From: Pocillopora damicornis
Taxonomy: Eukaryota
DNA length: 64,000 nucleotides
Reading direction: 5' to 3'
Assembly: GCF_003704095.1 (NCBI RefSeq)
Contig: NW_020845389.1
Span: 1-64,000 of the forward strand
Of this stretch, positions 16,448 to 33,402 are shown piece by piece; positions within the stretch are counted from its first letter, which is position 1, and the number at the start of each line of letters is the position of its first letter. The translations under genes and the position numbers were made by a program. The notes under the pieces are model-generated. The model did not search any database, was not told the DNA's origin, and worked only from the letters and a program-made list of their open reading frames with translations.

Positions 16448-17212
16448 ATGAGTAAAAGAAGAGCTTCATCTAAAACCGGATCGTTGAAAAAGCGAGGGAA
16501 AGTTGAAGATGTCGACCAAACAGCGGGAAACGAGGTGAAAACCTTGGTAGAGAAAGTAGCTCGCGAACTGCACAAGAATGCAGATCACAAGAAAAGTCAA
16601 CCCATGAAGAAATACCTGAGGGATAAGTTCGAGTTTTTAGGTCTTAGCAGCCCTGTAAGGAGGAGCGTTTGTAAGGAATTATTGAAAGAAAAATTGAACT
16701 CAGGCGACACGAGAGACTTCGTGCGGCTTTTATGGACAAAACCGGAGCGAGAATTCCAGTACTTTGCCATCGATTACCTCGAGAAGCACTTAGAATCTTC
16801 CAAAGACTTTGAAGAGAACATCCAGTGCATGAAAGATTTGATCACGAACAAATCTTGGTGGGACACTGTTGATGCGCTAGCGTCTAAGATGGTTGGGCAA
16901 CTCGTGAAACAACATCGAGATTTAGGAAAAGTTATCATGGAAGAATGGATCAATCATGAAAACATGTGGCTCAGAAGAACCGCCATACTTCATCAGCTTT
17001 CTTACAAAGAGGAAACTGACGAGGAGATGCTGTTCCGCTTCTGCAATCTAAGGGCAGCCGAGGAAGAATTTTTCATCCGAAAGGCAATTGGATGGGCCCT
17101 AAGACAGTACGCTCGGACTTCTGGTTCCAAGGTCAAGAAGTATCTACTGAAGCACAAGGGGGAATTAAGTGGCTTGAGCTTTAAGGAGGCTTCCAAACAT
17201 TTGCACTTGTGA
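16448..17212 (+). CDS. AlkD-like HEAT-repeat DNA alkylation repair glycosylase (intronless, 254 aa from MSKRR)
   Basis: AlkD-family motifs MKKYLRDKFEFLGL...RR, LW.KPEREFQYFAIDYL, SWWDTVD, WLRRTAILHQL and EFFIRKAIGWALRQY. Basic N-terminus KRRASSKTGSLKKRGK is NLS-like. An upstream in-frame ATG at 16355 is less likely to be used. Confidence 0.92.
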   Translation: MSKRRASSKTGSLKKRGKVEDVDQTAGNEVKTLVEKVARELHKNADHKKSQPMKKYLRDKFEFLGLSSPVRRSVCKELLKEKLNSGDTRDFVRLLWTKPEREFQYFAIDYLEKHLESSKDFEENIQCMKDLITNKSWWDTVDALASKMVGQLVKQHRDLGKVIMEEWINHENMWLRRTAILHQLSYKEETDEEMLFRFCNLRAAEEEFFIRKAIGWALRQYARTSGSKVKKYLLKHKGELSGLSFKEASKHLHL

Positions 17213-18796
17213 AGATATACCCACACTGCCTCTTGTCTCCTCTAACTTTGACGAGAGGTGTACCCTGCCAATTGGGACTTTTTCTCCCAGGTTGTATAAA
17301 TAGATGAAGTTTTCAGTTATGGTTCAAAATTTTTTCCTGGTTTGCAGTTTTCTTTAAACTGGTTTGTTTTTATCACTATACAAAAATATTTATCAGAGTG
17401 GCTGAAAATTTTCTTTAAGGAAAAAGCTTCTCCATAACATGTCTTTTGTGTTTACATAAGCCCAGGATTTCTCCGATATATTACTATACAAAGAAAAATA
17501 TTTATCACAGTGACTGAAAATTTACCAGTACACGGGGGAATTCCTATTGTTTTCATATCCATACATGGAGTTGTGTTGCAGTTCGTTAATGTTTCTTACC
17601 TTTGTGTACTGGTACATGAGGACACAACCGAAAATTTTCTTTAAGGAAAAAGCTTCTTCATAACATGTCCATTGTGTTTATATAAGCCTGTGATTTCTCT
17701 GATGGAAAGTTGAAATTTTAGAGCCTTTGCATCCAACCCACAAACCTTCATATCTTTTTAACTAAAGGCATGCATTTCAACCCGTATTTTAGACATACAC
17801 ACAAAATATATGTACATGTAAATCAGAATTTTGAATCAATTAAAACTCAGGTTAACCAATCTTTCTTTTAGATCCTTGTTTCTATTTTTTTCTTCCTCTT
17901 TTTGTCTTTCATTGTCTGAATTTCTTCTCAATCAAAATGTTTCCAAGGAAAAGTTGCAAGGATGCAAGGAGCTACCCATGTTTCAAGACAGAGCCATTGG
18001 GAGGATATGGGGTTAATTTTTCTTCCCATGATTAATACAACAGAAGGTTCGGGTAACTGGTGTAGATAGGCTACTACCAGTTGAAGCTAAAAGGGACTTT
18101 CCCATACCGTGGCACAGTTTTGCAAATAAAATTATTTCTTGGATTTTTCTAAAGGTTGTTGTTTATGATGGTTAAGCTTAATCATAATTTGCCTTGTTGC
18201 TTTCATATACACCAACCCACAAAGTCAATCTGTCAGTAATAGATCACAAAATTAATAATGCCAAAATGTGGTGAGAACAAAAACGAGGCACTTAAGGCAA
18301 AGCCAAGTGTGTCAATGATGTTTTTAACACATTTTGACATCTTCTGCAATCTCTTATTGTACAGACCCACATCAACATGGAATCTATTGGTTAAAAAAGC
18401 AAAATGTTGTTAATGGTGATGGCATCTATGCATTTTTCCTACAATCGATCATAGGCATAAGCCAATCAAAATGTTTTTATAGGATTCAGCTTATTGTAAA
18501 CCCAGCTTGTCATTTAATTCCTGTCACATAACCCACATGTGTTTTTCTGTCTGTTCTTTTTTTGAGGACTTCACTCCTGAAAACAATTTTGGACTGTTTC
18601 ATGGGTTACCATGATCCTACAGAATTTTCTGTGTACTCATTAAAGAAAGAAGCCATTTTATTGAAAGCATAACCATGCAACAACACAAACAATATAGTAA
18701 TGTTTATCAAGTATCCACATTTATGAGTAAGATAGGCAAGCTGCAAATCATCAGCAGTGGTACTAGTGCTGTCAGTCAATTGATACCACTTATCCT

Positions 18797-20987
18797 TCAA
18801 TCAATGTTTGGTCTCTTATTTTCCAGCGTGCTGTAGTCAGTATGGGTGTAAAACTACAAAAATAAAAATCATACAAGGTAAGGTTATCAGATTATTTTTG
18901 CCTTGAATATAATTGGGGTTTATTTGTGCTTTGTAAAAAAATATCTCTAAGAGGATAAAAATACACCACAAAAAAAAACAAACAAACAAACCTTCAAGCA
19001 TTGGTCATGCTTTATCTTTTGCCATGGATATGGATTGTTCTTCCTGTCCCAGCTACCATGTAAACCACACAATAAGTTCAAAATATAATAATACTAAAAT
19101 GTGAAAAAGGTCAACACTAACAGACTCACAGAAAGACTTTCTAAACTAGGTTAAGGTAGGAATTCAGGTCCAAAGTATTGAGAAATTTATCTTGCTTTGA
19201 GATATTGTGAAATGCCTTTGGTCACATTCAACTTAAAGACAATTCTGTTAACAGACAACTTTTGAAAAATCTGCCTATTAACACAGAAATTTTTCGGTTA
19301 GGAGACTTCTCACTAAACACATTCGACACTTTTAGAAGCTGAAAAGGTCATATCATGAGTTGCGAAAAGAAAATTTGGAACTTGTTTTAGTTATGTTTCT
19401 AACTTAACTATTTACACCCTAACATCAGTATCCATTCTCTCCATACTCTTCTCTATACATTTTCTTGGGTGCTTTCGAGGAGAATTTGTTTAACAATCAA
19501 AGCTTCTCAGGTTAGCAATCATTTCCTTTATCCTTGTGATCTTAATGATTGATTCAGCAGAATTATTGTTATTAGAGATTAGATGCTGGTCACTCTAAGA
19601 GTTTAAAGGGTTAAAGAATTCTCTGCTGGTAAAGTAATACATGAAAATAACAGAGCTTTGAACTTGGATACAAAAGTTTATAAAGTAGTGATGGTCTAGA
19701 CAAGGGGATAAAGCTAATCTTTTTTTTTACAGCAAATATAGACTCATCAGACAGGTGTCTTGGGCAAGAATTCAAGTTATCTTATCAATCATATATTAAC
19801 TTAAAGCCTCAAGGATCACATTTGTAGGGGAAGATTACCTTCAGTGCAAAGGTATTACCTAAATCACTTGTTTAAGTCTATTAATCTTTCATGTACATAC
19901 GTTGCATCTGGGTTTTTAAGAGCCAGTCGCATTAAGTAATAACCAGCTCCAACACAACCAGCGCCAACCACAACAAAGAGTGGAACCAACTGAAAAAAAA
20001 TTAAAAGATAAAGTGATAAATGACAGAGACACTGCAATGGCGAATTTTCGACCCAAGACAAAAGGGACTCTAGCCCAGGGACATAACTGATCTGATTGTT
20101 AAATCTCCCCTCAAGCTGCTATACATTTCCTTTTATATAAGTGAAAAGAATTTGCTGTAAAAGCAATTTAACAACTTCTACTTGCTAGTATGAGTATTCT
20201 CATCATCTGTTTGCTGGATAATGTAGGGATATTACAGGGAAAAGGTAAATATTAATCTCTTCTGGGAGTTAAGGCGTTAAAGATCCTCAATTTTCATTTG
20301 GTACCCTTTGAAAAATGAAATCTGCAGGGATAAAATTTTTTACAGCAATTTTTTAAGTGTCCTTTAGTTCCTGATTGTTTTTAGCTGTTTCAGACGATAT
20401 CCCTAACCCCAAAAGAGAAAGCTTACCATCCACAGAGCTCAAGGTAAAGATAAAATAAGAAACTTTTACCACTCCATCACATTTTTTAAACCATTCCATT
20501 TCCTTACCATAAAACATTTCTTAATTTGAAAAAAAAAAAAAAAATATATATATATCTCATTTTTGAATTCTCAATCTACCTCCGTTTTTCAGAGGTACAA
20601 TTCTGCATTTGTTTCAGTAGTTTTACCCGTGATCTTTGTCAAGTAAATAAGCACAATACATAATACGTCACTGTCAATATTAATTACAATACAATAATCT
20701 TAGCATTGCTTTTATATCTTTTTTATGACGACCTGAAAGGTTTCTTTAACAAAAAACGGTAGTTCATTATTTGAAAGATCAAAGTGACGAAGGAATCGCA
20801 CAAATACAGAGGTAAGCTCAACTACGTATCGATACGCACATTCTAAAATTAACTCAACTCTAGAAGCTACATGAACCTTACACTAACCCCAATCAAACAA
20901 ACACCCAGCCAATACTTTAGGATAACTTAGTCCAGCTTAAAACCATAATCATACCTCGGGGTGTTTTCTCAGATAAGTAAAAACCAT
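18797..20987 (-). CDS. NDUFA4: NDUFA4/COXFA4 family paralogue A (79 aa)
   Basis: Exons 20987-20955, 19989-19901, 19052-18992, 18853-18797. Protein: MVFTYLRKHPELVPLFVVVGAGCVGAGYYLMRLALKNPDATWDRKNNPYPWQKIKHDQCLKFYTHTDYSTLENKRPNID*. Shows the family signature KHP.L.PLF - TM helix - R.AL.NPD..WD..NP.PW. Confidence 0.93.
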
Positions 20988-22453
20988 TTTAGCCGTTACT
21001 TGGTCGAAACAGTAGAAAAACGATGTTAAGCTAGATTCGCTTAGGCTCTTCCAAGATGGCGTTCTCACGAAACCGGACCCTTAAAGGCTTGGTGGCTAAG
21101 CAAAATATTGCGTCACAGTTACGGAGTACAATACGGCGAAATTCTTAGGGCAACAGTCTTTAGCTACATTAACAAATAAAGAGACTGAGAAAATCTAGAC
21201 TATCAATGCTGCAATCAAGGAAAATATACATAACGTATTTTTATTTAGCTTTATTTTCTTTTTAAAATTCTGAAGTGCAATCACGACATGTTTTCAGAAA
21301 AGGCATGGACTATTTTACCTTAAATATATATATATATATATATATAGAGAAATCAACTTGGCCAGTCTGCACAGGCAACAGAACTATGGCATAGAATGAT
21401 GAAGCGAGCTTAAATCTAAGTAGCAGTACTGTAGCCATGCACGTGCCTGCGTAGTTAGCGGTTTTCTGTGCACTTAAAAGCGATAATCGAGCGCCAGTGA
21501 AGCTGTGCCAGGCTTAGAACGAAAAAATTGGCAATTTGAAAAAAGCGTCGCAGCAACTCCGCCCTTTTTTTCAGATGTAAAGCGCCCCAAAAGGCCACTA
21601 AATACGGAGGCGTATTGCACACGGAGCACGTTGTTCAAAATGGCTTATAACGTAACAGATCTCATTGTCGAGTTCTACCATAATGTGCAAACTGACTTAT
21701 AACTACAATAGTATGAAGTGTTCACGTATGTTTCTGGTTCATGATTACTGCATACCACTCGTGTGCAGAGCGTCAGTTGAAAGGAACTCCTTAGGGAGGG
21801 ACTCAGTAATTATAATGGCAAGACTCGTCCAATGAATTATCAGTCAAAAAATTCAAACACAGAAGACTTTCCCTTTTTTCCTGTCACCTCAAATGTGAGA
21901 GCACTCCCCAAAGGTGGAGACCTTTACGTTTCTAGTCTTTTACTTTTACCTAAAAGTTTTTGTTAAGCATATTTAATGAAACAAGTACAGTACTGATACC
22001 AATTTAGGAACTTAAAAAAGGATTTAACGAGTTTTCTTGTGGAGGTAAAATTGAATATGTTGTGTTTGTCTAAACATTAATGGGAACACACATTTTTTTA
22101 ATGGAAATTAACAGAACTATGTTTCGTCAAAATGAAAAATTTATTTTCAAAGTTCAGCCAAGAGCAAGGGCTTACACAGATTAAATACTTTCAAACTATG
22201 TTTGTCATGTCAATATTTGAATCTCATTTGAAATGTTAATGCTTTTGTAGATTGGTTAGAACAGTTCAAAGAAAAATAACATCTTAAGATTTATAATGAA
22301 AAGTACATCTCTTGAAGCTACCATGTGTTTGCTAGGTGTTAAGTATCTTATATCATGTGATAATTTACTATTAATAAGAGTTCTTATCAAATGCAAACCC
22401 AGTGGGCCTTATTCTGACTCCCTGGTAATCTTTTCCATACACTCCAAGGCTCA

Positions 22454-25355
22454 TTACACTTCCGCATCTGGTCGGGCTTTTTGAAGCTTTGAGTAATCTG
22501 TATGACTGTAAAGCTGTTGGAAAAATTAAAATGTTTGTTTCAGCTGCAGAATTGAAAAAAAAATTTTTAATTGATGATATGGTTCTGTAAACTTTTGTGA
22601 TTCCCCATTTAGGGCATTTACTAAGAATTGAGAAACACTTTGTCGAGATGGGAAATTGTAAAACTACTGTAAATGCTCACCTTGAGTTGTTCATCATGCT
22701 TGACATTGAGCCAAGGATGAGGGTTATTCTTCTTGTCCCAGCTGTAAAGAAAAGACACCGAGCTAGTTCAGAGAGAAGATCAGAAAGGCAAGGTAATACA
22801 CACATATTCAAACATGCATTTCTTTTTCGGTGTGACTGCAAAACGCAGCGGCGAGAACGCCGACAAATTAGACGCTGCTGGTTACGGAGAAAAACACCCA
22901 ATCGCAGGTTATCCTGCAAGAATAACTTAAAACACATTTGGTTACCCGAGTTGCGCATTCAGGTCTGAGGTGTTTGTTACATAAAGTGAGGTAATTTTGC
23001 TTACAAATTGCATCAATATAAACCGTCCCTTACAAGGCCAATCTTTCCTATACCCGCTCTCATGTCTTACTCCCCTTTTATTTCGACAATAAAATGTCTC
23101 CCTCCTTCCAGCGAATTCACCATTTGCGCCTAGCTCCTGCAAAGTAACGCTCCCGTTTGAAAGCTAAAGATCATTTTGGAACTTATCGTGTAGACTGACA
23201 TGAGAAAAATATCGAAAATTTCCACAGAAGTAGCGTGATGGGCAATTAACAGGTTCTGCACCCCTCACGAGAGAAAACTTGCTCTCTTTTGTTATATAAT
23301 ATTCGAAAGAAATGAAAGAATCTAGGAAAAAAAACTATCTTCCCAATTCCTCAGTAATATTTCATTAGACACTTATTACAGACAAAGCTTTATGTAAATA
23401 TGTGGCGATGTGGCATTTTTTCGATTGACAAAAAATACTCGTTTTTGCTTTTGCAAAATCATAAGGAAGTTTAGTGAAAAAAAATTTTGTTTAGAATCTT
23501 AGGAAGAAAAGAAAAATTACATCATCCGTAAATCACAAGTTGATCAGCGATCAAGAAGTCAAGTGAGAAGGTGTACAATGACTGTCAAAACAAAACGCCG
23601 TGTGACATGCCACAGATGAAAGAGTAATCAATCTGCACTCATGTACGACGAAGTTTGATCTCTGAGATCGATCAGGACAAAAAGAGGGGTAAACTGTAGA
23701 CTTCAAGCGAATTTCGCTTTCAAGATCCCTTTGGACTCTTCAATCTCTTCAGTATTAAAGTCAAGGCAAGTCCGTGACAACTGGAGTGACGATTAAGTCA
23801 TATTGAGTCACAATTAACTGTCATAGAGATAATCTTTGCTTTTGAGTTAGCATGATAATGGAGTCAGTCAAATTAAGAAGCAGACCATTGGAGAAAACAG
23901 AATTGTTCAGTTGATGTTCAGACTTAAATTGATCAATACGGTCGTGAGTTGGACGAAGAAGACATTAAGTACGTGAGCTGAAGGAGGAAAATTATTTATG
24001 ACTAAGAGAATTGTATTTTTTTCTTCCTGTTCAGATATTTGATCAGGAGTCCCAAATTACATGCGTCACCTCATGCAAGGAGACAAAATAAGCATCAAAT
24101 TACATTGCTCTGCGACAATTACAAATTATTGCATTAATTGACGTTAAATATGTTACCCCGTCAGAGAAAAGTGAACCAAGAGCACAACATATTAGAATCA
24201 ACTCGTTTTCGAAAGAGGTTTTAATCCGTAGAACACTTCTGCTTAGATACAAGGTTGCCTTTGAAATGGGTTTTCTCGTACTTTTTTAATGGACCTTTTT
24301 CATTTCATGCCCCAATAATCAATCGACTTTTCTCATTTAATTTTCTAAGTTAAAACATACCTTGCCTCAGGGTTTTTCGTTGCCTGTCTGATCGTAAAAG
24401 CCACAGCTCCAGCACAGCCAGCGCCAATAATCACGAATAGAGGTGTCAGCTGCGAACAGGAAGTTAGGAATAAGGAATAAACTAAACAAATTTTTGCCAC
24501 TTGGCAACAGAGAATCTTTCGTAAGTTAAATTGACACGAATTCCATTTTTTGTTGCTTTTCGGCTATCGACCTAGTACGTCTTACGTAAAGTATAATCTT
24601 ACATCAGAACTGCTATGTTCTACATAGCAGTTCTGATGTAAATCGCAGGTCCTGACCCCTTTCCGTGCAACGAAGCTTTACTGAATTTCTGCTCATCAGA
24701 ATTGTTTACAGCAAAAGAATTGGTGAATGGTTTGCTGTGTCGTAAAACTGTCATTTATTGCTTTTTGCGTTTTCACATAATTTAGCAGTGTTGTTTTAAA
24801 ATTCAAATGAAATGTCAAAGCCCAGCCGTCTGGCTAGCTTTAAGAAGATAATCTACATAAAGTTGTTCCTTTAATTATCTTTAGCAAGGTTTTCAACGTT
24901 TAAAAAATATTTTCCTCTTTAAATCAGTAACTTTCTTAATAACATTGGAATATGATGAGACTGCGGAAAAACTCAGATCTGTTTGATGTAAAGCTTTGCG
25001 AATGAAACGTTTTGCGCGACATTCATTTTGTCAGTGGAATGAAATTTTCGTATTAATGAATTCACACCCGTAGTGCAAACTACGAAATTTTCAGTGGCAA
25101 CGAAAAAATCTGCTGCTGTTGTGGCTGTTTCTTCCACCAGTTTCACAAAAAAATGCAAGACCAATTCCTTTAGCGTCGAGAAGATCCCTGAGCCCATCTT
25201 TTTCTCTTATCGATAAGCCCATTTGAAAGACCTCTTGTACGTGTAGAATTGCACGGAACGACATTTCCTGATAATCGCAAATGTGTATGGTTTGAAAATT
25301 GATAAAAACTGGCCAGTCTTACCTCTGGTGATTTTCTGAGCAAAGCAAGGACCAT
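22454..25355 (-). CDS. NDUFA4/COXFA4 family paralogue B (80 aa)
   Basis: Exons 25355-25323, 24449-24361, 22741-22681, 22513-22454 (33/89/61/60 nt, same phases as paralogue A). Protein: MVLALLRKSPELTPLFVIIGAGCAGAVAFTIRQATKNPEASWDKKNNPHPWLNVKHDEQLKLYSHTDYSKLQKARPDAEV*. Confidence 0.92.
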
Positions 25356-25470
25356 TTTAGATCTTCAAAGGGAACAATTAAAACGCTTTTGCAAGCTTAG
25401 TGAGGCGATAATTTGCAGGGAACGCTGCCAAAGTGGTCCGAAACACTTCACCTGTATTCTGAACTGAAAG

Positions 25471-25521
25471 GGGTTATAAATAACCAAAATAAACTGAAAA
25501 TGACATGTGTGACGTCACGCG
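25471..25521 (-). promoter_or_regulatory. TATA-like box and CRE upstream of NDUFA4 paralogue B
   Basis: The - strand reads GGTTATTTATAACCC at 25485-25471; TGACGTCA at 25509-25516, abutting CACGCG. Confidence 0.5.
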
Positions 25522-26450
25522 TCCTACCCGGAATTATACTCATTCTACGCAGCTGGGTAGTTTGCGTGAATATCAGCCATATTTGCCTCTGGAAACAAAG
25601 GAAATGATTCACCGCTCACATAATGGATTTCAAAAACCAATATCGACATTTTGTATTTTTCAGTTTCACCACCAGAGCCATGCTAAACATCACGTAAAGA
25701 AAAAAACATCCAACATCCTTTCATTAGAATTACAAAGGTGTGATCCGAGTAAATAGAAGCTATGTTTGGATATCCAATGAGATGTCGGGCATCGAAAAAA
25801 AAAACATTGGCGTGAACCTAACATCGTTGTAATTCTAACCGAGTGTTAAGTCTTTTTTTTTCTTCTAATTTTTCATCAAGCTCAAGGCGTGCTTATTCGA
25901 TGGGGCAAATGTATATATTTTTTTTGATGACCAGATGATATTTGTAGATCGCCATAGGTTCGTTTAGACCTACCGAAAAGTTTCGTCCAATAACTTCCTT
26001 TCCTATACTATATATCGATATCCCTAGTGAATTCCAAGGTCTCGAGGAATTACGATTAGTGACCTCTCAATTCTCGTTCTGGTTCGCGTTAATTCCTCTT
26101 TGTACATTCTTGGACAATGCGTCTGGAAAGGGTGTCGTGTACTCGCATGAACTTTAACGAGCCCCTTCTTTCATGCAGGTTAACTGAATCGAATGAAAAA
26201 TATGCTTCTCAGTTGTTTTGATCTGTCATTCAAATCTAAATACTTCGCAGTAAAAGAATTGAAAATTACACAAGATAGAATGCAAATAATTATTTAATAA
26301 AACTTTAGTCGCCTTAGGTCTGATATATTTACATACGCGTACACGCCCAATACTGGACACATCATTCATTTAAGTTTTTAACGATCTCGAAATAGTGTTT
26401 CCAGTAGGAATCGACAGGATACAGTTTTTTTTTCTCTGAAAGTGACCGTA

Positions 26451-26667
26451 CATGAGGGTCTCAATGGAGTGACGGCTTTTACGGCCAACAATTAAAATTT
26501 TGGCCAATTCACGGCTAACGGTTAGTATCTTTCCATTGTTGTCACTCAAAATTCTTTTTTCACGGTGAACTTTCTTCTCTAGACTAATGGTTGAAGTTTG
26601 TCAATATTTACACCTTACGGCTAAATTTTTTAGCCGTTTTACAGCTGACCCAATCGAGACCCTCGTG
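26451..26667. mobile_element. Small foldback/MITE with terminal inverted repeats
   Basis: catgagggtctc... and ...gagaccctcgtg ends, with internal repeated acggc(t/c)a units. Confidence 0.6.
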
Positions 26668-26856
26668 CATCTTCATGCTGCATTCGCATATTTTTGGACG
26701 TTCCTACCATTAAATAACATTTATGGTCCTGATATAAATTATCATCATGATTTAAATATATAATACATTTGGACGGTTGAATTTTTCTTGCAACATTAAA
26801 CTTATAGTAGTTTTCCGCGGACCTTTGTATTGTTTTCTCCATCACAATCCACGTTC

Positions 26857-28360
26857 TCAGCGTTTTCCATCAGCGGCTGAGGGATGTGAAGGTTTGTAAA
26901 GCTGTCGGTTGAATAGTGAAAAAAATACACGAATTAATAAATATATTGAAATATAGCGAGAGAAAATAATGGACTTTCTCTTGACTGTAAGTATAAGACC
27001 AGCGCTGTAAAGCAAAAGAACGCGACTCCATTTTCTCCCGATGAAAATCATCAAGGACAATTTTAATTTCTTAATTTGGCTCTCTGATATCACTCACCAA
27101 GGATTTGATGTTTCATCTTTATCATGACATTAATTTAAAGCAAGTAAATTTTATGATAATACTTTTTCCCGACGTTTCCACTGAAATAAAAATAGACTGC
27201 AAGAATTCTGCTTGTTCACCTTCACTTGTTCATCTGGTTTGATATTAAGCCATGGATGGGGGTTGTTTTTCTTGTCCCAGCTGTCAAAAAGAAAAAAAAC
27301 AGTTATGATTGAAAAATAAAGCTGTAGCAATCCATACATCACGTCAAGCGTCAGACGAAACCTTGGGAAGTGCTCTATTGATCAGTTTCGGATAAAAAAA
27401 ATGAGAGTCGCATACCATGCCTCAGGGTTTTTCGTGGCTTGTCTTATCAGAAAAGCCGTAGCTCCAGTAGTCGCAGTTCCCATAATCACCAAGAGAGGGA
27501 TTACCTGAAAAGAAAATGACGAAAATGAAATGATAAATGAAACCATCAATCCACAGAGCTACATAAAATACATATAAAACACGACATAATTCCGTGTCTG
27601 CAAAAAGTAGCCAAAGTGCTATCGGAGACTACACAGGAATATTGCTATGACAGCTACGTAAAGACCCAATTTTTTGTAGAAGTTATTTTTTCAGTTGATG
27701 CCAATATTAACAAGGAAGTTGGGATCCTCTCTGTAAAATGTCTCAGTTTCCAGGAATCTGATACAAGAAACGTGCGGAATGTCACGTCAATTTCGCAATC
27801 TTCTCTCATCTGAAATAATCAGACATGCCATTGGATGTTTTTAAAAGTGTTTAAAATTAGACTGCTTGCTTATTCAAAACTCTTGGCTTTACCACCCGCT
27901 TTGAAATGGAAACCGGCCTAAATCCGAGGCCGTTTCTCGGGGAGGAATGGATCGTTCGCCTATGTTCTCAATTTTATGTTTGGAAAGTCTTACTGATATG
28001 TTTCTCGTAAACTGACAATATTCATTATTTCAGGTTTCGTCGAAGATTTCATTTTCCCTCAGTTCTTTTTCCTGTGACAAATTATATCTTTGCGAAAAAG
28101 CAGTTTTTCACATCGATTTCCTGTTTTCGTCAATTTTTAGTTTTTTTTTTTATGAAATGGAAACAAAATTGAAATAAATAATGAAAAACATTCTACCCCA
28201 GAAACTTCGCAAAAACTTTCCTTAAACGATATTTATCGCTAAAATGCTTTCAAAGTGATAGGCTCGTGCAAAATTGCACGTTCAGGGAGGAGCAACTCCC
28301 GGCTACATAATCAATACCTGCACTCACCTCTGGGGCTTTTCTTATCGCAGAGAGAACCAT
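26857..28360 (-). CDS. NDUFA4/COXFA4 family paralogue C (75 aa, divergent C-terminus)
   Basis: Exons 28360-28328, 27504-27416, 27280-27220, 26901-26857. Protein: MVLSAIRKAPEVIPLLVIMGTATTGATAFLIRQATKNPEACWDKKNNPHPWLNIKPDEQVKLYKPSHPSAADGKR*. Confidence 0.9.
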
Positions 28361-28643
28361 TTTCCTAGCAAATTGGAATGTTTTCGTCGCAAATCTCGGA
28401 GCAACGTTGACTGGTAAGAATTTATCACAAGGGTTATTTAAAACAGCCGTAACACTTCGCTTCTGTTAGAACTGATCGTTCAAATCTCCGGTGACGGATA
28501 TTTATCTTAATAATGTAGCTAAATTTATCCCATATGGGACGTCATCTGTGACTTTCCGTTTCAGCCTTGACGTGCAGGAGACGCCTGGGACGAGCCAAAT
28601 GGCACGTTCAGAGTTGTAAAGGCCTGGTGGCGGAGCAACCAAC

Positions 28644-31600
28644 ATGGCGGCTACAAGGATTCTCGCCTGTTCCAGAGTTAAGGTTTGTTGATCGTAAGTT
28701 TGATCAGCTTTCTCGAATCGTGGTATTAGTCGCTTAGTTCTATAAAATATAAAAGCGTGATTATTTTTCAGTGAAGCGGGCCCACTTGGAAAAATAACCA
28801 TGATTGTGCTCCTTTTTGAAGAATAATCTAACAATCTAACTCAGTTTTCCTATTAATATTTTTCAAGTAACTGATTTTCTTTGTTGTCAATATTGAGGAT
28901 TTGGATGATGTAATTTCCCCGCCACATTTTTGGTCTATACTGACAGTTCAGAGGTCACATCGCCCCATTGCCTCGTCACTATCGCCCCCGAGTCACGTCA
29001 ACCCCAATTTGTTTGAGCTCGCCCCACGTCACGTATCTCCCTAACAAAAACATCGCAAGGAACAGTGGGAATCCAGAAGTTTCAATGAGGAGTCAGCAAA
29101 ATTATACATTAAAGGGCCACTTATTTATATCTTTTTTAATTATTAGATCGAGTTGATATTGTGTTATTCTTTATTCTGCGAAGACTGCTGGCAAAGTGGA
29201 TATTGGCGGCTCTGTATTCTATAGTTACAACTCAAGTTTCTCTTACCACACCATCCCTGGCTTCTACTCTCAATTAGTAATTTTTTTTTACTGATGGAAA
29301 TAACTTATATTATCTGAACAAATTTTGTATTAATGAGGATAAATGAAGTTAAGCTTTTTATTATTTATGGCAAGAAAAGTTGGCCCGTTTCTTTTGCCTA
29401 AAAGCTTTCCTAATGGATTGTAATGGTTCTTTTCACAGTCATGCAGTCTTGCACCAATCTTCAAAGTACATGAATCAATGTTAACCTCAGCTCTGGTCAT
29501 ACAAGCAAGAACAAAGGTCAGCAAAAAATCACCATTTCATGATGGAAAGGGCCATAAGGAAAAGATGCAGGAAGCAAACAGCAGCAGACAGAAATATATT
29601 GACAAAATGACTGTCAATAGACCTTTGAATAGACCCTATCTTATTGAAAGCCCAGGTGACATAATTATAGTTATTTTGATTATGACTACCATTTTTACGT
29701 TATTTAACCTTGTGGCCCTCTGTCAAACCTTTTAACTTGCAAGATCTCATGAGTAGTTCTCCTTACTGTCTGCCATACAGTTCTTTTAATGTTAGCTTCG
29801 AGAATTTGGTATTGGATCAATCAATAATCCCCCAATTACTATTTTTCTTTATTCTCATTACTTGTCTGGTTGATATAGTACTGACAATGCAAGGAGAAAT
29901 TTTGTCTTGGTCACTCATGGGAGTTAAAGTGTTAAATGAATGAAAAGTTTAAAGCTCCAAAATTGTTAAGTGTGCTTCAGTAGAAATAAGGAAAAAAATG
30001 AAGTTAAAAATTACTGAACTACCTTTTATTTATTTGCAGGAGTGATATTCAGTGACTACCTTCCAATAAGAAGATATTACTTTTTCACACCACGGGTAAG
30101 AAGAACATAAAGGAAAAGTCATAGTTTTATGTTATTATTAACACTTTATAGTGTTCAGCCAACACAATCAGTGATATGCCCTCAGAGACAGTCTGGACTT
30201 GTGATTCTAAATGTCTGGGTATGAGCCAAGGACAATTCAAAGTGTTGAGTTCTTGGGCGTGGTTATTTCCTCTCATGTTGCCTCCATCCCCCACATTGCA
30301 TTCATGCAATGTGGGGGATGGATCCCAAAATGATCCTGACCACTGAAGTCATCCCCAATCCTGGGACAACACCCAAACAGACCTTGAAATGATCCAAATT
30401 TTTTTTTAGGGTTTTGAACCCAAAAAGATCCCAATGAATTAAAAAATATATTATAATTATAGTAATCAATGGGATAATGGATTGCTCTGTTGTAAAGGAA
30501 ACTATTAAGTCATCATATTTTGGTCCTTGTAAAAAACTTATTTGTGGCTTTAGTGGGAAAAGTGGGGATCATTTTGCAGGCAGAATTATTCCATGATTGA
30601 TTTGCAAAACATTTTTGTACCATTTGTATAATGAAAGAGGTCTATTAACTGGATTTCTTTTTTTTGCTGAAGGGAATAAAAGAAAGATGGAATGCATTCA
30701 AGAATGGTTTTTGGACCATATACAGGTGATAGATAGTTTGCCAATTATGATATTGCTGATAGGGAGATACATGGCTTAGGCACCGTCATTAACCCTTTAC
30801 ACCCTAACATCAATGTGCATATTCTCTTTACTGTCCTCTGTACATTTCCTAAGGTGCTGATAAGGAGAATTTGTTCAATAATCAAGAGCCTTTTTAATTG
30901 GTGATTATTTCCTTCATCCATGTTACCTAAATGTGTGATTCAGGGGTGATATCATAGAGAGAAATTATATGCTGGTCACTCCTAGGGGGCCAAAGAATAA
31001 ATAGTTATTTGTATGGAAGAGCAAATTATAAGGCATAGCATGTACAAGAAAGCCATGGCGCACTTTGAAAATTGCATAACTATTAGGTTTTAAGAGAACA
31101 AGTTAGTTTTCATAGTTTCTGCGCTGTTGTCAAAAACACTCTATAGTGGGCTTCTTTGAGTAAGCATGGACATGTTTTGTTATGAAATAATAAAATGAGC
31201 ACTTTTTAATGGTAACAAATTTTTCTTTTGATAGTCTTGTCTACATTAGAAGACATATAAAACCCTTCAAATTAACAGACTTTGGCCCAAGCGCTCAGGA
31301 AATCTACATTGCAGCAAATGAAGCACTTGCTAGGTGAGTGTTCAGCAAAGGAAATGCAAAATCTGTCTTAAATTTCACATTCAAACTAATAATTGTAAGG
31401 TTTAGACTAGTATTCAGGGGTAATAAGGGGATTATTAGTTACTCTAAAACTAAATTATTTGCACTAACATTATAAGAATTGTATGGCATATAGTAAGGAA
31501 ATATTTTCAACTACTAGACAAGTTCAGTAGTGTTCTCAGCTACAAGGATCTCTCCATTTCATTTCTTCACTGCAATGCAAATATATGAATTTCATATATC

Positions 31601-33402
31601 TAAAATCATCATTCATCACTTGGATGGGTTATTTGGACCAAACACATTGACCAGCTCCCAGTTGGCTTATTAGCTCAGTTGGTAGAGTGCTGTACTGGTA
31701 TCACAAAGGTCAAGGGTTCAAATCCCGTATGGGCCTGAATTTTTTTTAGGTCCTATTTTCAACTACCAGTTCAGTAGTGTTCTTAGCTGGGATCTCTTAA
31801 TTTCATTTCTTCACTGCAGTGCAGATATATGAATTTCATATATCTAAAATCATTACTCAAAAGGTCTTAGGCGTGAGAGGGTTAACCTACAACAAGTGCA
31901 AAAGTTGCCTCCCCTTATTACTGCTTCAATCCACTGAGTACGTTTCTGTTTCTTGTATATCTTCTGGCAGAAAAAGCAAAAAAGATCTTCAGGAGGTGGT
32001 GACCAACTCAGTATACCGGGTAAGGATGTTATAAAAAACCAACTATTTTAAAGGTGGATGAAAAAATAAGGGAAATATTTGGTAGACTCTGAGGAGAAAT
32101 TTCATTGAAATCTTAAGCGCAAACAGGTGAAAAGCAGGGAGCAATATTGCACAGATAGCTCATACATAGGCATCCATATAATCCATACTGTTCTCCATAC
32201 ATTTCCTATGATGCTGACATGGAGAATTTGCTCACCTATAAAGAGCTACTCCTACTAGTTAGTGATCATTTTCCCTTATTCTCATTACCTTAATGTTTGA
32301 TTTAGCAGTGATACTGTAGGGAGAAATTAGATACCAATCACTCATAGGGGTCAAAGGGTTAAGTGGAATGTTAACTCTTGGTACACCTATTTTAATTTGT
32401 TGCATAAATTTACAGATTTGCAGCGATCTTGACTTTGTTTCAGGCACTTAGCAATGAGTTCTTTCCTCCAAACAAGAATCTTCACTGGCGTTTCGTTTCA
32501 GCTGTAACAAGGCCTCAGGTTGTACATGTAAGAGTTGGCCAGGTTCAGACCAAAGATAACTTGTTTGCACAAATTACTGTGAAAATTCATTCAAAACAGG
32601 TAAGATATTGCTGTTCAACCTTTTACAACTTAACATCAGTATGCACATTCCTCATACCTTTCTCTATACATTTTCTAAGGTGCTGACAAAGAGAATTTGT
32701 TGAACAATTAAAGGCTTCTTTAGTTTCTGATCATTTCCTTTATTCTCATGACCTTAAAGTGTGCTTCAGGGGTAACATTTTAGGGAGAAATTAGATGGTT
32801 GTCACTCTTAGGGGTTAAAGGGTTACCTTTTCAACCCCCATGAGTAACCAAGGGCTAGGTTCTCCCTGCAATTCCAATATTATCTGGCAAATAAGTTGTG
32901 AGAACAGAAAAGCTTATCTGCAAAGGGGTGTTCTTTGATATAAGAACAAATCCTTCTGTCTTAGTAAAGAGAAAGGAGATACTGAATTACTTAATGAGCC
33001 TTGGGGGTTGAAATGGTTAAAACCCGAAAAAGTGCCTTGGGTTGTGATAGACTGTCATCTTACCCAGGAGGGGATGTAGACACACTCCTGGTCACTCCCC
33101 ATTGCAGAAATGCTCTTACAAGGAATTATGAGTGATGATAGATCGTTATCCTGGCTACATAATGGCAACCAGTGAAATTTTGCCTTTTTTTTCTCCTTTA
33201 GGTCATGGCAGTAAAAGATAGGTATGGAAGGCACATATCTGGGAGTGACAAGCTTCCTAAACAAGTCATAGACTATGTTGTGTTTGAACGTCCCTTGACT
33301 AGTACCAAGTATGGAACATGGAAAGTATGTGGAAAGCTGCACGCCTTCCCAGCTGAGGTAGATACAGGAAAGCACCTCGTCAAGAATGTTCCTGCAGTTT
33401 AG
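28644..33402 (+). CDS. MRPL45: Mitochondrial ribosomal protein L45 (Tim44-like domain)
   Basis: Exons 28644-28682, 29439-29655, 30040-30095, 30673-30725, 31235-31333, 31971-32019, 32444-32599, 33202-33402. Presequence-like N-terminus. Motifs AQEIYIAANEALA, LHWRFVSAVTRPQVVHVR, FAQITVKIHSKQVMAVKDRYGR and VIDYVVFERPL...GTWKVCGKL. Confidence 0.88.
31500..31855 (+). repeat. tRNA-containing tandem repeat unit (about 1.5 copies) with a degenerate tRNA-Thr(GGT)-like core at 31664-31736
   Basis: ggcttattagctcagttggtagag...ggttcaaatccc (A/B boxes) with a broken anticodon stem, flanked by a ~105-bp direct repeat (tattttcaactac...catatatctaaaatcat) at ~31502 and ~31754. Confidence 0.7.

What the first reader, a model, noticed from the sequence alone, without database searches (positions are those of the whole stretch)
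18797..28360. Tandem triplet of diverged NDUFA4/COXFA4 genes: a candidate complex IV subunit-switch system
Seen: three intact 4-exon genes in the same orientation with identical first three coding-exon sizes (33/89/61 nt) and phases, but clearly diverged proteins. A keeps the canonical YL.RLAL.NPD. B and C share a derived AF.IRQATKNPEA.WDKKNNPHPWLN. C has a TM helix rich in Thr and a new C-terminus. Known: NDUFA4 is a cytochrome c oxidase subunit, and vertebrates replace it with hypoxia-induced NDUFA4L2 or inflammation-induced C15orf48/NMES1. Inference: a local, lineage-specific expansion that independently produced swappable isoforms, plausibly for the day-hyperoxia/night-hypoxia cycle of a symbiotic cnidarian.
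Basis: partly seen in the sequence, partly recalled or inferred. Interest (0 to 1): 0.82.

Follow-up and report, generated by a model that had tools for sequence, protein, structure and literature searches.

The report
Three tandem coral NDUFA4 genes
A stony coral carries three neighbouring, expressed and conserved copies of the gene for a small cytochrome c oxidase subunit, made by old duplications within stony corals; they are probably alternative versions of that subunit, but nothing ties them to symbiosis or to daily oxygen swings.

Summary
Three intact four-exon NDUFA4/COXFA4 (Pfam B12D) genes lie head to tail on the minus strand at 18797-28360. They are the only copies found in this 234-Mb genome, most likely a Pocillopora.

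- **Expression:** every predicted intron is spliced in public RNA assemblies. All three genes show pN well below pS between coral genera, so B and C are not dead copies.
- **Origin:** the genes sit in a conserved slot: BZW, then MRPL45 head to head with NDUFA4, then AlkD. The slot holds one NDUFA4 gene in a jellyfish and two sea anemones, two in Porites, and three in Oculina, Desmophyllum and this window. This points to stepwise tandem duplication inside stony corals.
- **Against the symbiosis/oxygen idea:** the symbiotic anemone Exaiptasia has one copy, and the non-symbiotic deep-sea coral Desmophyllum has three.
- **Limits:** protein trees of about 80 residues cannot resolve the deep relations. 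B is as close to outgroup NDUFA4 as A is. Only part of the shared B/C motif is derived.
- **Regulation:** B and C keep an ancestral CRE-type promoter block; A has a different conserved one.

A subunit-isoform role is plausible but untested. The scan's note s1-785091 covers the same stretch (promoters).

The parts
18797..20987 (-). Gene A (79 aa): exons 20955-20987, 19901-19989, 18992-19052, 18797-18853. It is the last gene of the array, next to the AlkD-like gene.
   Evidence: Model and splice sites. Pfam PF06522 on exons 2 and 3. The protein is identical to database protein P0023. RNA contigs L022-L025 carry the spliced ORF. It matches NDUFA4 chains of solved complex IV at E 3e-23.
22454..25355 (-). 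Gene B (80 aa): exons 25323-25355, 24361-24449, 22681-22741, 22454-22513.
   Evidence: All three introns are spliced in RNA contigs of 4 runs from 4 studies. P0017 differs from B by one residue and matches NDUFA4 in solved structures at E 2e-19. Orthologues exist in Stylophora, Oculina and Desmophyllum.
26857..28360 (-). Gene C (75 aa): exons 28328-28360, 27416-27504, 27220-27280, 26857-26901. It is the first gene of the array, head to head with the MRPL45-like gene.
   Evidence: Its introns are spliced in 3-4 RNA runs. The C-like protein P0024 matches human NDUFA4 at E 6e-19 over residues 3-66 only. Between two pocilloporid-type C genes the core is constrained and the tail is not.
25441..25524 (-). 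B promoter. It holds a conserved block with an exact CRE palindrome (TGACGTCA, 25510-25517) flanked by CGTG, a TATA-like TTATTTATAAC (25473-25483) and a conserved TACAGGTGAAG (25446-25456). RNA contig 5' ends fall at 25441-25464.
   Evidence: Three-genus alignment. The exact palindrome occurs only twice in the window. Contig starts.
28361..28643 (.). Shared 283-bp spacer between C's ATG (28360, minus strand) and the MRPL45-like ATG (28644, plus strand). It holds a CRE-like GACGTCAT (28539-28546) and TGACGTGC (28569-28576).
   Evidence: Alignment with Oculina, Desmophyllum, Porites and Nematostella. The head-to-head arrangement is conserved. tblastx of the window against the Oculina and Porites flanks.
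21051..21101 (-). A promoter blocks conserved in four coral genera. On the plus strand they read CCAAGATGGCGT (21051-21062, YY1-like) and GGCTTGGTGGCTAAGC (21086-21101). There is no full CRE.
20988..22453 (-). B-A spacer, present in full in RNA contigs that also carry spliced B and spliced A. AATAAA lies at 22145, and one contig starts at 22122.
   Evidence: Contigs cannot prove a single molecule.
25356..26856 (-). C 3'UTR and C-B spacer. RNA contigs run without a break from B exon 1 up to 26413-26490 in two of the four runs (to 25776 in a third), and from 26523 into C exon 4. Only a dispersed repeat interrupts them.
   Evidence: tables 2 and 8.
28620..33300 (+). MRPL45-like gene (Tim44/MBA1 domains in its orthologues), divergent from C.
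   Evidence: tblastx to the Oculina and Porites genes. Pfam labels of the orthologues.
16448..17212 (+). Intronless AlkD-like DNA glycosylase gene, the conserved downstream neighbour of the array.
   Evidence: Pfam PF08713, E 3e-63. It is the same neighbour in Desmophyllum, Porites and Nematostella.

Best explanation
The three genes encode paralogous versions of NDUFA4/COXFA4, the small single-pass subunit of cytochrome c oxidase.

They arose by two rounds of tandem duplication inside the ancestral cnidarian NDUFA4 slot. In that slot NDUFA4 lies head to head with MRPL45 and upstream of AlkD. One duplication (A versus B/C type) predates the split of complex and robust stony corals. The other (B versus C) is at least as old as the robust corals.

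All three genes are transcribed, spliced and kept by purifying selection, and each has its own conserved promoter. B and C retain the ancestral CRE-type promoter. A has a different one.

**Inferred, not shown:** complex IV has one NDUFA4 position, so the three proteins are most likely alternative occupants of it, that is, isoforms deployed by cell type, stage or stress. In pocilloporids, C has also lost constraint on the C-terminal tail. Which signal controls which copy is unknown.
For: **Family membership**
- Pfam PF06522 on single exons.
- Full-length A, B-like and C-like proteins match only NDUFA4 chains of solved complex IV structures, at E 3e-23, 2e-19 and 6e-19.

**Copy number**
- These are the only copies in the genome.

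**Expression**
- All six B and C introns are spliced exactly as modelled in RNA contigs of 3-4 runs from four studies.
- Spliced A sits on RNA contigs of four runs.

**Selection**
- pN is below pS in 1000 of 1000 bootstraps for every orthologue pair.
- pN/pS is 0.16-0.27 for A, 0.10-0.26 for B and 0.28-0.40 for C.
- C's 61-codon core gives 0.063/0.486 and its 14-codon tail 0.467/0.509.

**Synteny series**
- One copy in Nematostella, Exaiptasia and Rhopilema.
- Two in two Porites species.
- Three in Oculina, Desmophyllum and the window.
- All share the 89-nt and 61-nt exons.

**Promoters**
- Footprints are conserved across genera while introns are not.

**Precedent**
- Isoform exchange at this subunit is known in vertebrates (PMC8654286, PMC8035321, PMC5448071).
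Against: - There is no protein-level evidence that B or C enters complex IV.
- No condition-specific expression could be measured. Only assembled contigs were available, and they do not give expression levels.
- The protein tree does not place B/C next to A, and the coral-only clade is merely not rejected (p-AU 0.139).
- RNA contigs run across both spacers. The three genes may therefore be partly co-transcribed rather than independently switched.
Confidence: 0.6

Rival explanations
1. One reading: B and C are hypoxia or hyperoxia isoforms evolved for the day/night oxygen cycle of a photosymbiotic host.
For: - B's promoter block has CGTG directly beside the CRE in three genera (GAC[G/A]CGTGACGTCAC). 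Oculina even has ACGTG.
- Vertebrate NDUFA4L2 is HIF-induced (PMC5448071).
- The ratio of the depths of B's and C's spliced contigs differs about ten-fold among four runs. The tool warns that such depths are a poor measure.
Against: - The symbiotic anemone Exaiptasia has a single gene in the slot.
- The azooxanthellate cold-water coral Desmophyllum pertusum has the C, B and A loci.
- The CRE block is also upstream of the single Nematostella gene, so it is ancestral rather than a new inducible element.
- A five-base CGTG core is weak evidence.
Confidence: 0.1
2. B/C-type genes are ancient paralogues, orthologous to bilaterian C15orf48/MISTRAV or another old lineage. They would have been lost from sea anemones and jellyfish rather than made in stony corals.
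For: - In the 44-row tree, B/C does not group with A. It sits near demosponge and fungal sequences.
- A B/C plus C15orf48 clade is not rejected (p-AU 0.20).
- MISTRAV-like genes are reported in protostomes (PMC7793259).
- An octocoral also has a tandem pair.
Against: - The copies lie in tandem in a slot that holds one gene in three non-coral cnidarians.
- B keeps the NDUFA4-type tail (HTDYSKL..RPD) and is 53% identical to bat NDUFA4 but 36% to tuatara C15orf48.
- C15orf48 sits on a branch of length 4.2, so its placement means little.
- The octocoral pair is in a different neighbourhood.
Confidence: 0.1
3. B and/or C have left complex IV and serve another membrane complex or another role (neofunctionalisation).
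For: - The IRQAT change replaces the widely conserved RLAL next to the helix.
- C's tail has lost the conserved DYSKL..RPD motif and evolves almost neutrally in pocilloporids.
- Early vertebrate work tied NDUFA4L2 to complex I effects (PMC5448071).
Against: - The helix and the WDKKNNP.PW core are strongly constrained (C core pN/pS about 0.13).
- They align over nearly the full length to NDUFA4 in solved complex IV structures.
Confidence: 0.15
4. The copies are redundant and kept only for dosage.
For: All three are expressed, and RNA contigs run across the spacers.
Against: - Each paralogue has its own residues conserved across genera, with seven diagnostic A versus B/C columns.
- Each has its own conserved promoter.
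- The copies are saturated at synonymous sites, and their introns share no similarity. Dosage duplicates are not expected to keep distinct identities for that long.
Confidence: 0.05

Closest known systems
Vertebrate NDUFA4 / NDUFA4L2 / C15orf48 (COXFA4 family; the 'MISTR' proteins)
   Same: - Same Pfam family (PF06522), about 80 aa, one helix and the WD.KNNP.PW core.
- Several paralogues of one complex IV subunit in one genome.
- In vertebrates the paralogues replace NDUFA4 under hypoxia or inflammation (PMC8654286, PMC8035321, PMC5448071, PMC7793259).
   Different: - The coral copies are a tandem array in the ancestral slot, most likely made within stony corals.
- B keeps the NDUFA4-type tail, unlike C15orf48.
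- No inducing signal, no embedded miRNA and no exchange in the enzyme has been shown.
- Orthology to the vertebrate paralogues could not be settled.
Single-copy cnidarian NDUFA4 (Nematostella, Exaiptasia, Rhopilema)
   Same: - Same exon plan (89-nt and 61-nt exons).
- Same neighbours: MRPL45 head to head in all three, and AlkD downstream in Nematostella by Pfam and probably in Exaiptasia (unlabelled 264-aa gene); Rhopilema has a different downstream neighbour.
- A similar CRE block upstream in Nematostella.
   Different: There is one gene instead of three, and the anemone proteins have neither the A-type nor the B/C-type signature in full.
Mammalian oxygen- or tissue-specific COX isoform pairs (COX4i1/COX4i2, COX6A, COX7A)
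   Same: These are paralogous nuclear subunits that occupy one position of complex IV and are deployed by condition or tissue (PMC5448071, PMC7072730).
   Different: They are different subunits. Their exchange and kinetic effects are shown experimentally, whereas here they are only inferred.
Octocoral (Dendronephthya gigantea) tandem NDUFA4 pair
   Same: Two head-to-tail B12D genes with the same exon plan.
   Different: The pair lies in another genomic neighbourhood. The second copy is much more diverged, and its relation to the stony-coral copies is unresolved.

Membership tests
NDUFA4/COXFA4 family (Pfam B12D, PF06522) | Match to the family profile above the curated cut-off | tested here: met
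   Exon 2 of A, B and C scores 36.6-37.4 bits against a cut-off of 21.5. Exon 3 scores 21.8-23.3 bits. Database twins P0023, P0017 and P0019 carry PF06522.
NDUFA4/COXFA4 family (Pfam B12D, PF06522) | Protein of about 80 residues with one N-terminal hydrophobic helix followed by the W-D-[KR]-x-N-N-P-x-P-W core | tested here: met
   Translations and the alignment. There are full-length matches to NDUFA4 chains of solved structures 5z62, 8ugh, 9i7u and 9w2z. C-type matches stop at residue 66.
NDUFA4/COXFA4 family (Pfam B12D, PF06522) | Gene structure and genomic position shared with undisputed cnidarian NDUFA4 | tested here: met
   The 89-nt and 61-nt exons occur in every cnidarian locus examined. 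The window shares the MRPL45 and AlkD neighbours.
NDUFA4/COXFA4 family (Pfam B12D, PF06522) | Physical presence in cytochrome c oxidase | not testable with these tools
   This needs purified coral complex IV and mass spectrometry.
Condition-specific NDUFA4 isoforms (NDUFA4L2/C15orf48-like switch) | Extra paralogue kept by selection beside the main copy | tested here: met
   pN is below pS in all 1000 bootstraps for B, C and Complexa B/C-type orthologue pairs. Orthologues occur in at least five coral genera.
Condition-specific NDUFA4 isoforms (NDUFA4L2/C15orf48-like switch) | Expression induced by a defined signal (hypoxia, inflammation) while the main copy falls | not testable with these tools
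   Only assembled RNA contigs were on hand, and they cannot give levels. Conserved but different promoters are compatible with such control and do not prove it.
Condition-specific NDUFA4 isoforms (NDUFA4L2/C15orf48-like switch) | Mutually exclusive occupancy of the NDUFA4 site | not testable with these tools
   No coral complex IV data are available.
Condition-specific NDUFA4 isoforms (NDUFA4L2/C15orf48-like switch) | Orthology to vertebrate NDUFA4L2 or C15orf48 | tested here: inconclusive
   AU tests reject neither B/C plus C15orf48 (p 0.20) nor A plus B/C (p 0.139). Synteny favours a stony-coral origin. No vertebrate NDUFA4L2 sequence was obtained.

The most novel reading that the evidence does not exclude
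Stony corals evolved their own three-member NDUFA4 isoform system, independently of vertebrates and several hundred million years ago. The array itself would be part of the control. C and B carry the ancestral CRE-type promoter, A a different one, and transcription runs on from C into B and from B into A. Firing of an upstream copy could then damp the next one, giving condition-dependent remodelling of complex IV in a non-bilaterian animal.
Probability: 0.12. Interest if true: 0.7.

Novelty: new member of a known kind. Interest (0 to 1): 0.42.

Why it matters
NDUFA4 is the one complex IV subunit known to be exchanged under stress in vertebrates.

A separately evolved, long-conserved set of three versions in reef-building corals would show that remodelling this position is a recurrent solution. 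It would also give coral physiologists three easily told-apart transcripts to follow in bleaching, deoxygenation and developmental data.

The present evidence shows the genes are real, old, expressed and constrained. It also removes the tempting but unsupported link to photosymbiosis. None of the papers in the library searched here links NDUFA4 to corals; the few that mention both NDUFA4 and Cnidaria do so only in passing. The genes themselves are already in public annotations as 'NDUFA4-like', some wrongly fused.

Tried and rejected
1. **Whole-protein searches with the window's own spliced models were not done.** A 29-aa exon cannot reach 80-aa proteins in the word search. The large representative search was therefore used once with B's exon 2. 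It gave 13 hits, several of them low-complexity false positives, but also one full-length B orthologue (P0008) that seeded the later searches.
2. **Deep phylogeny.** The 44-row and 21-row trees leave the deep forks open. Three AU tests reject nothing. I draw no conclusion from tree position beyond the A group, the B/C group, and C grouping with Complexa B/C (85/91).
3. **Jukes-Cantor corrected dN/dS** failed or inflated through synonymous saturation, and its bootstrap counts are invalid. I replaced it with uncorrected pN/pS.
4. **Ranking B against C by contig depth.** The tool warns against this, so I mention it only as a weak hint.
5. **Pseudogene reading of B and C.** Rejected on splicing, intact frames and pN below pS.
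6. **Recent or assembly-artefact duplication.** Rejected, because there is no intron or spacer similarity between the copies.
7. **Inverted-repeat search at 26380-26720.** It found nothing, so I do not call the repeat there a MITE.
8. **Weak PF06522 hits** on contigs C2847 and C4168 (E about 3) were treated as noise and not followed.
9. **Gene A could not be laid with reads.** There was one call of at most 6000 letters. Its expression rests on the Logan contigs.


Full report
**1. What is in the sequence**

Reading 18500-28700 and rebuilding the models from coordinates gives three complete genes on the minus strand. Each has four coding exons, and the first three are 33, 89 and 61 nt in all three genes. 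All introns are GT..AG and the frames are open.

- A is 79 aa, B is 80 aa and C is 75 aa.
- The finding's ends are A's stop codon and C's start codon.
- Over the colinear 61 residues the identities are A/B 37, A/C 31 and B/C 43.
- At the DNA level only exons still resemble each other; introns and spacers do not. None of the duplications is therefore recent.

**How the spliced models were handled.** Searches used single exons by reference, database proteins, or alignments of these (A1, A2). Joined translations were made only inside local scripts from window coordinates, for translation, alignment, trees and substitution counts.

**2. Family**

Exon 2 of each gene matches Pfam PF06522 (B12D, the NDUFA4/MLRQ family) at E about 2e-9. 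Exon 3 matches at E about 1e-4 to 4e-5.

A six-frame scan of the window's own 234-Mb, 4393-contig genome finds these three loci and nothing else above noise.

Database proteins identical or nearly identical to the models match only 'cytochrome c oxidase subunit NDUFA4' chains among all solved structures:

- P0023 is identical to A: E 3e-23.
- P0017 is B with one substitution: E 2e-19.
- P0024 is a C-type protein from a related coral: E 6e-19.

P0023 is named NDUFA4-like of Pocillopora damicornis by NCBI. The window is therefore from that species or a very close relative.

C's 'Thr-rich' helix (GTATTGAT) is in fact close to the human NDUFA4 helix (GTGATGAT).

**3. Expression**

One read-laying run of 6000 letters was allowed. 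I spent it on B and C (22400-28399) with four RNA runs from four studies. All runs are stored as assembled contigs.

- All six introns appear as joints at exactly the predicted bases, with CT..AC ends (GT..AG on the minus strand).
- B's three introns are seen in four runs. C's are seen in three or four.
- Contigs covering introns also exist, at much lower word depth. Unspliced RNA or some DNA is therefore present, but spliced mRNA of both genes clearly exists.

Instead, Logan contigs from four runs carry A's fully spliced ORF. The refutation 'B and C are unexpressed' therefore fails.

Contigs cannot give expression levels. The ratio of B to C junction depth differs roughly ten-fold between runs, but the tool itself warns against using such figures.

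**4. Selection**

I rebuilt orthologous coding sequences from fetched loci and RNA contigs. Synonymous sites are near saturation, so corrected dN/dS was unstable. I used uncorrected proportions with 1000 codon bootstraps. In every orthologue pair, pN was below pS in all 1000 resamples.

| Paralogue | pN/pS between orthologues |
|---|---|
| A | 0.16-0.27 |
| B | 0.10-0.26 |
| C | 0.28-0.40 |
| Porites versus Montipora B/C-type | 0.28 |

B evolves no faster than A. Between Pocillopora and Desmophyllum, pN is 0.137 for A and 0.128 for B.

C is the fast copy, and its change is concentrated in the tail. Between the window's C and P0024, the 61-codon core has pN 0.063 against pS 0.486. The 14-codon tail has 0.467 against 0.509. 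Oculina's C still has the usual tail (LYSHTDYSKL...), so the 'new C-terminus' is confined to the pocilloporid-type sequences and looks like loss of constraint rather than a designed novelty.

**5. Origin**

The slot is conserved. The window has the same neighbours:

- an MRPL45-like gene at 28620-33300 on the plus strand, with its ATG 283 bp from C's ATG;
- a BZW-like gene beyond it;
- an intronless AlkD-like gene at 16448-17212;
- an aminoacyl-tRNA synthetase gene further on.

An exon-pattern scan of each locus confirms the copy counts:

| Species | Neighbours seen in the slot | NDUFA4 genes |
|---|---|---|
| Rhopilema (jellyfish) | BZW, MRPL45 | 1 |
| Nematostella (two assemblies) | MRPL45, AlkD | 1 |
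| Exaiptasia | BZW; the two adjacent genes carry no Pfam label | 1 |
| Porites (two species) | BZW, MRPL45, AlkD | 2 (a B/C-type next to MRPL45, then an A-type) |
| Oculina | MRPL45 (locus cut inside A) | 3 (C, B, A) |
| Desmophyllum | MRPL45, AlkD | 3 (C, B, A) |
| This window | BZW, MRPL45, AlkD | 3 (C, B, A) |

The simplest history is one gene in the cnidarian ancestor, then a tandem duplication before the complex/robust split of stony corals, then a second one giving B and C.

Inside the B/C group, the Complexa gene and the robust-coral C genes group together (85/91) and share the MRPL45-adjacent position. B therefore either arose in robust corals or is older and was lost in Porites.

**6. 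What the trees cannot say**

With about 85 usable columns, the 44-row tree recovers the A group (94/91), the B/C group (89/99), the anemones and the bilaterians. It leaves their relations open. AU tests do not reject any of these clades:

- A plus B/C: p 0.139;
- A plus B/C plus anemones: p 0.106;
- B/C plus tuatara C15orf48: p 0.20.

C15orf48 sits on a branch of 4.2 changes per site. Independent origin therefore rests on synteny and on B's retention of the NDUFA4-type tail, not on the tree. No vertebrate NDUFA4L2 sequence was obtained.

**7. 'Canonical' versus 'derived'**

B is 53% identical to bat NDUFA4, 51% to Nematostella and 56% to Exaiptasia. A is 49%, 43% and 45%. C is 40-43%.

Seven columns separate all A from nearly all B/C sequences: Y29F, L33Q, Y49H, Q52L, K53N, C59Q and F62L. 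Outgroups side with A at some columns (L33) and with B/C at others (Q59; H49 and L52 in jellyfish and sponges). Both lineages are mosaics.

**8. Promoters**

Upstream alignments across genera show conserved blocks even though introns have no similarity left.

- **B:** an exact CRE palindrome at 25510-25517 with an adjoining CGTG, a TATA-like element and a conserved TACAGGTGAAG. RNA contigs begin here, at 25441-25464.
- **C and the Porites B/C gene:** a very similar block, ..GATGACGTCACA.ATGT.A.. Nematostella's single gene has TGACGTCACAC. This promoter type is therefore ancestral and was copied with the gene.
- **A:** two conserved blocks of its own instead, one YY1-like.

This agrees in outline with the scan's note s1-785091. 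It shows that the two kinds of promoter have been kept apart for a long time. It does not show what they respond to.

**9. Symbiosis and oxygen**

Copy number follows phylogeny. The symbiotic anemone Exaiptasia has one gene. The azooxanthellate deep-water coral Desmophyllum pertusum has all three loci. Oculina, which is facultatively symbiotic, has three. These lifestyles come from general knowledge, not from a tool.

Desmophyllum's C exon 2 is 88 nt instead of 89, one base short in an A-run. This may be an assembly error or a real break. If read with X at the break, the sequence groups with the C genes. The diel-oxygen idea is therefore not supported by distribution, though only expression data can kill it.

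**10. Verdict**

These are real, old, expressed and constrained tandem paralogues of a complex IV subunit. They are most likely alternative isoforms with separate regulation (confidence 0.6 for that reading). The existence and conservation of the genes is far more certain than that.

It is a new member of a known kind. Subunit isoforms of cytochrome c oxidase, and of NDUFA4 in particular, are well known in vertebrates (PMC5448071, PMC8654286, PMC8035321, PMC7793259). None of the papers in the library links NDUFA4 to corals; the few that mention both NDUFA4 and Cnidaria do so only in passing.

Noticed in passing
window 20955-25464 (RNA contigs L022, L023, L024, L025): Three assembled RNA contigs from separate runs carry spliced B, the whole 1.46-kb B-A spacer and spliced A in one piece. 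A fourth contig starts at 22122, just after an AATAAA at 22145. This means either read-through from B into A or overlapping transcripts. Contigs cannot tell which.
   Followed up: partly
window 25323-26901: RNA contigs run without a break from B exon 1 upstream to 26413-26490 in two of the four runs (to 25776 in a third), at a depth between that of introns and exons. Another runs from 26523 into C exon 4. C's transcripts seem to run on toward or into B. The only canonical poly(A) signal found between C's stop and B's ATG is ATTAAA at 26298.
   Followed up: partly
window 26445-26670: A dispersed repeat of about 200 bp lies in C's 3' region. The genome has at least 386 candidate copies, and the 40 scored are 75-82% identical. 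It explains the many loose contig ends there. No terminal inverted repeat was detected.
   Followed up: yes
L010:1497-1584 (Desmophyllum pertusum): The C-type gene's exon 2 is 88 nt instead of 89, one A short in an A-run, which shifts the frame. The public annotation fuses C and B into one 175-aa product (P0134). This is either an assembly error or a true break in a non-symbiotic coral.
   Followed up: partly
P0021 (Porites evermanni), P0016 (Stylophora pistillata), P0134 (Desmophyllum): Public gene models join exons of neighbouring paralogues into two-domain 'NDUFA4' proteins. This is possible because all copies share exon phases. No such cross-gene joint appeared among the joints listed for C and B in four RNA runs.
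   Followed up: partly
L017:10001-15144 (Dendronephthya gigantea): An octocoral has its own tandem pair of B12D genes with the same exon plan, in a different neighbourhood. The second copy is strongly diverged (WANKRSQLPW in place of WDKKNNP.PW).
   Followed up: partly
window 28361-28646 and loci L009, L013-L016, L020: NDUFA4 and an MRPL45-like mitochondrial ribosomal protein gene are head to head, a few hundred bases or less apart, from jellyfish to stony corals. This is a long-lived bidirectional pair of two mitochondrial genes.
   Followed up: partly
window 16448-17212: An intronless AlkD-like DNA glycosylase gene (PF08713, E 3e-63) is the conserved downstream neighbour in Nematostella, Porites, Desmophyllum and here. 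It is therefore an old resident of hexacoral genomes rather than a recent arrival (scan note s1-785116).
   Followed up: partly
window, B versus C coding exons: The synonymous difference between B and C within this genome (pS 0.42) is lower than between orthologues of either gene in Oculina (0.62-0.73). This could be chance on about 55 synonymous sites, or some gene conversion between B and C.
   Followed up: no
window 21051-21101 versus 28620-28650: A's promoter and the C/MRPL45 spacer both contain a GGCYTGGTGGCKRAGC-like motif and a CAAnATGGCG motif, in opposite order. This may be a remnant of the duplicated bidirectional promoter.
   Followed up: no
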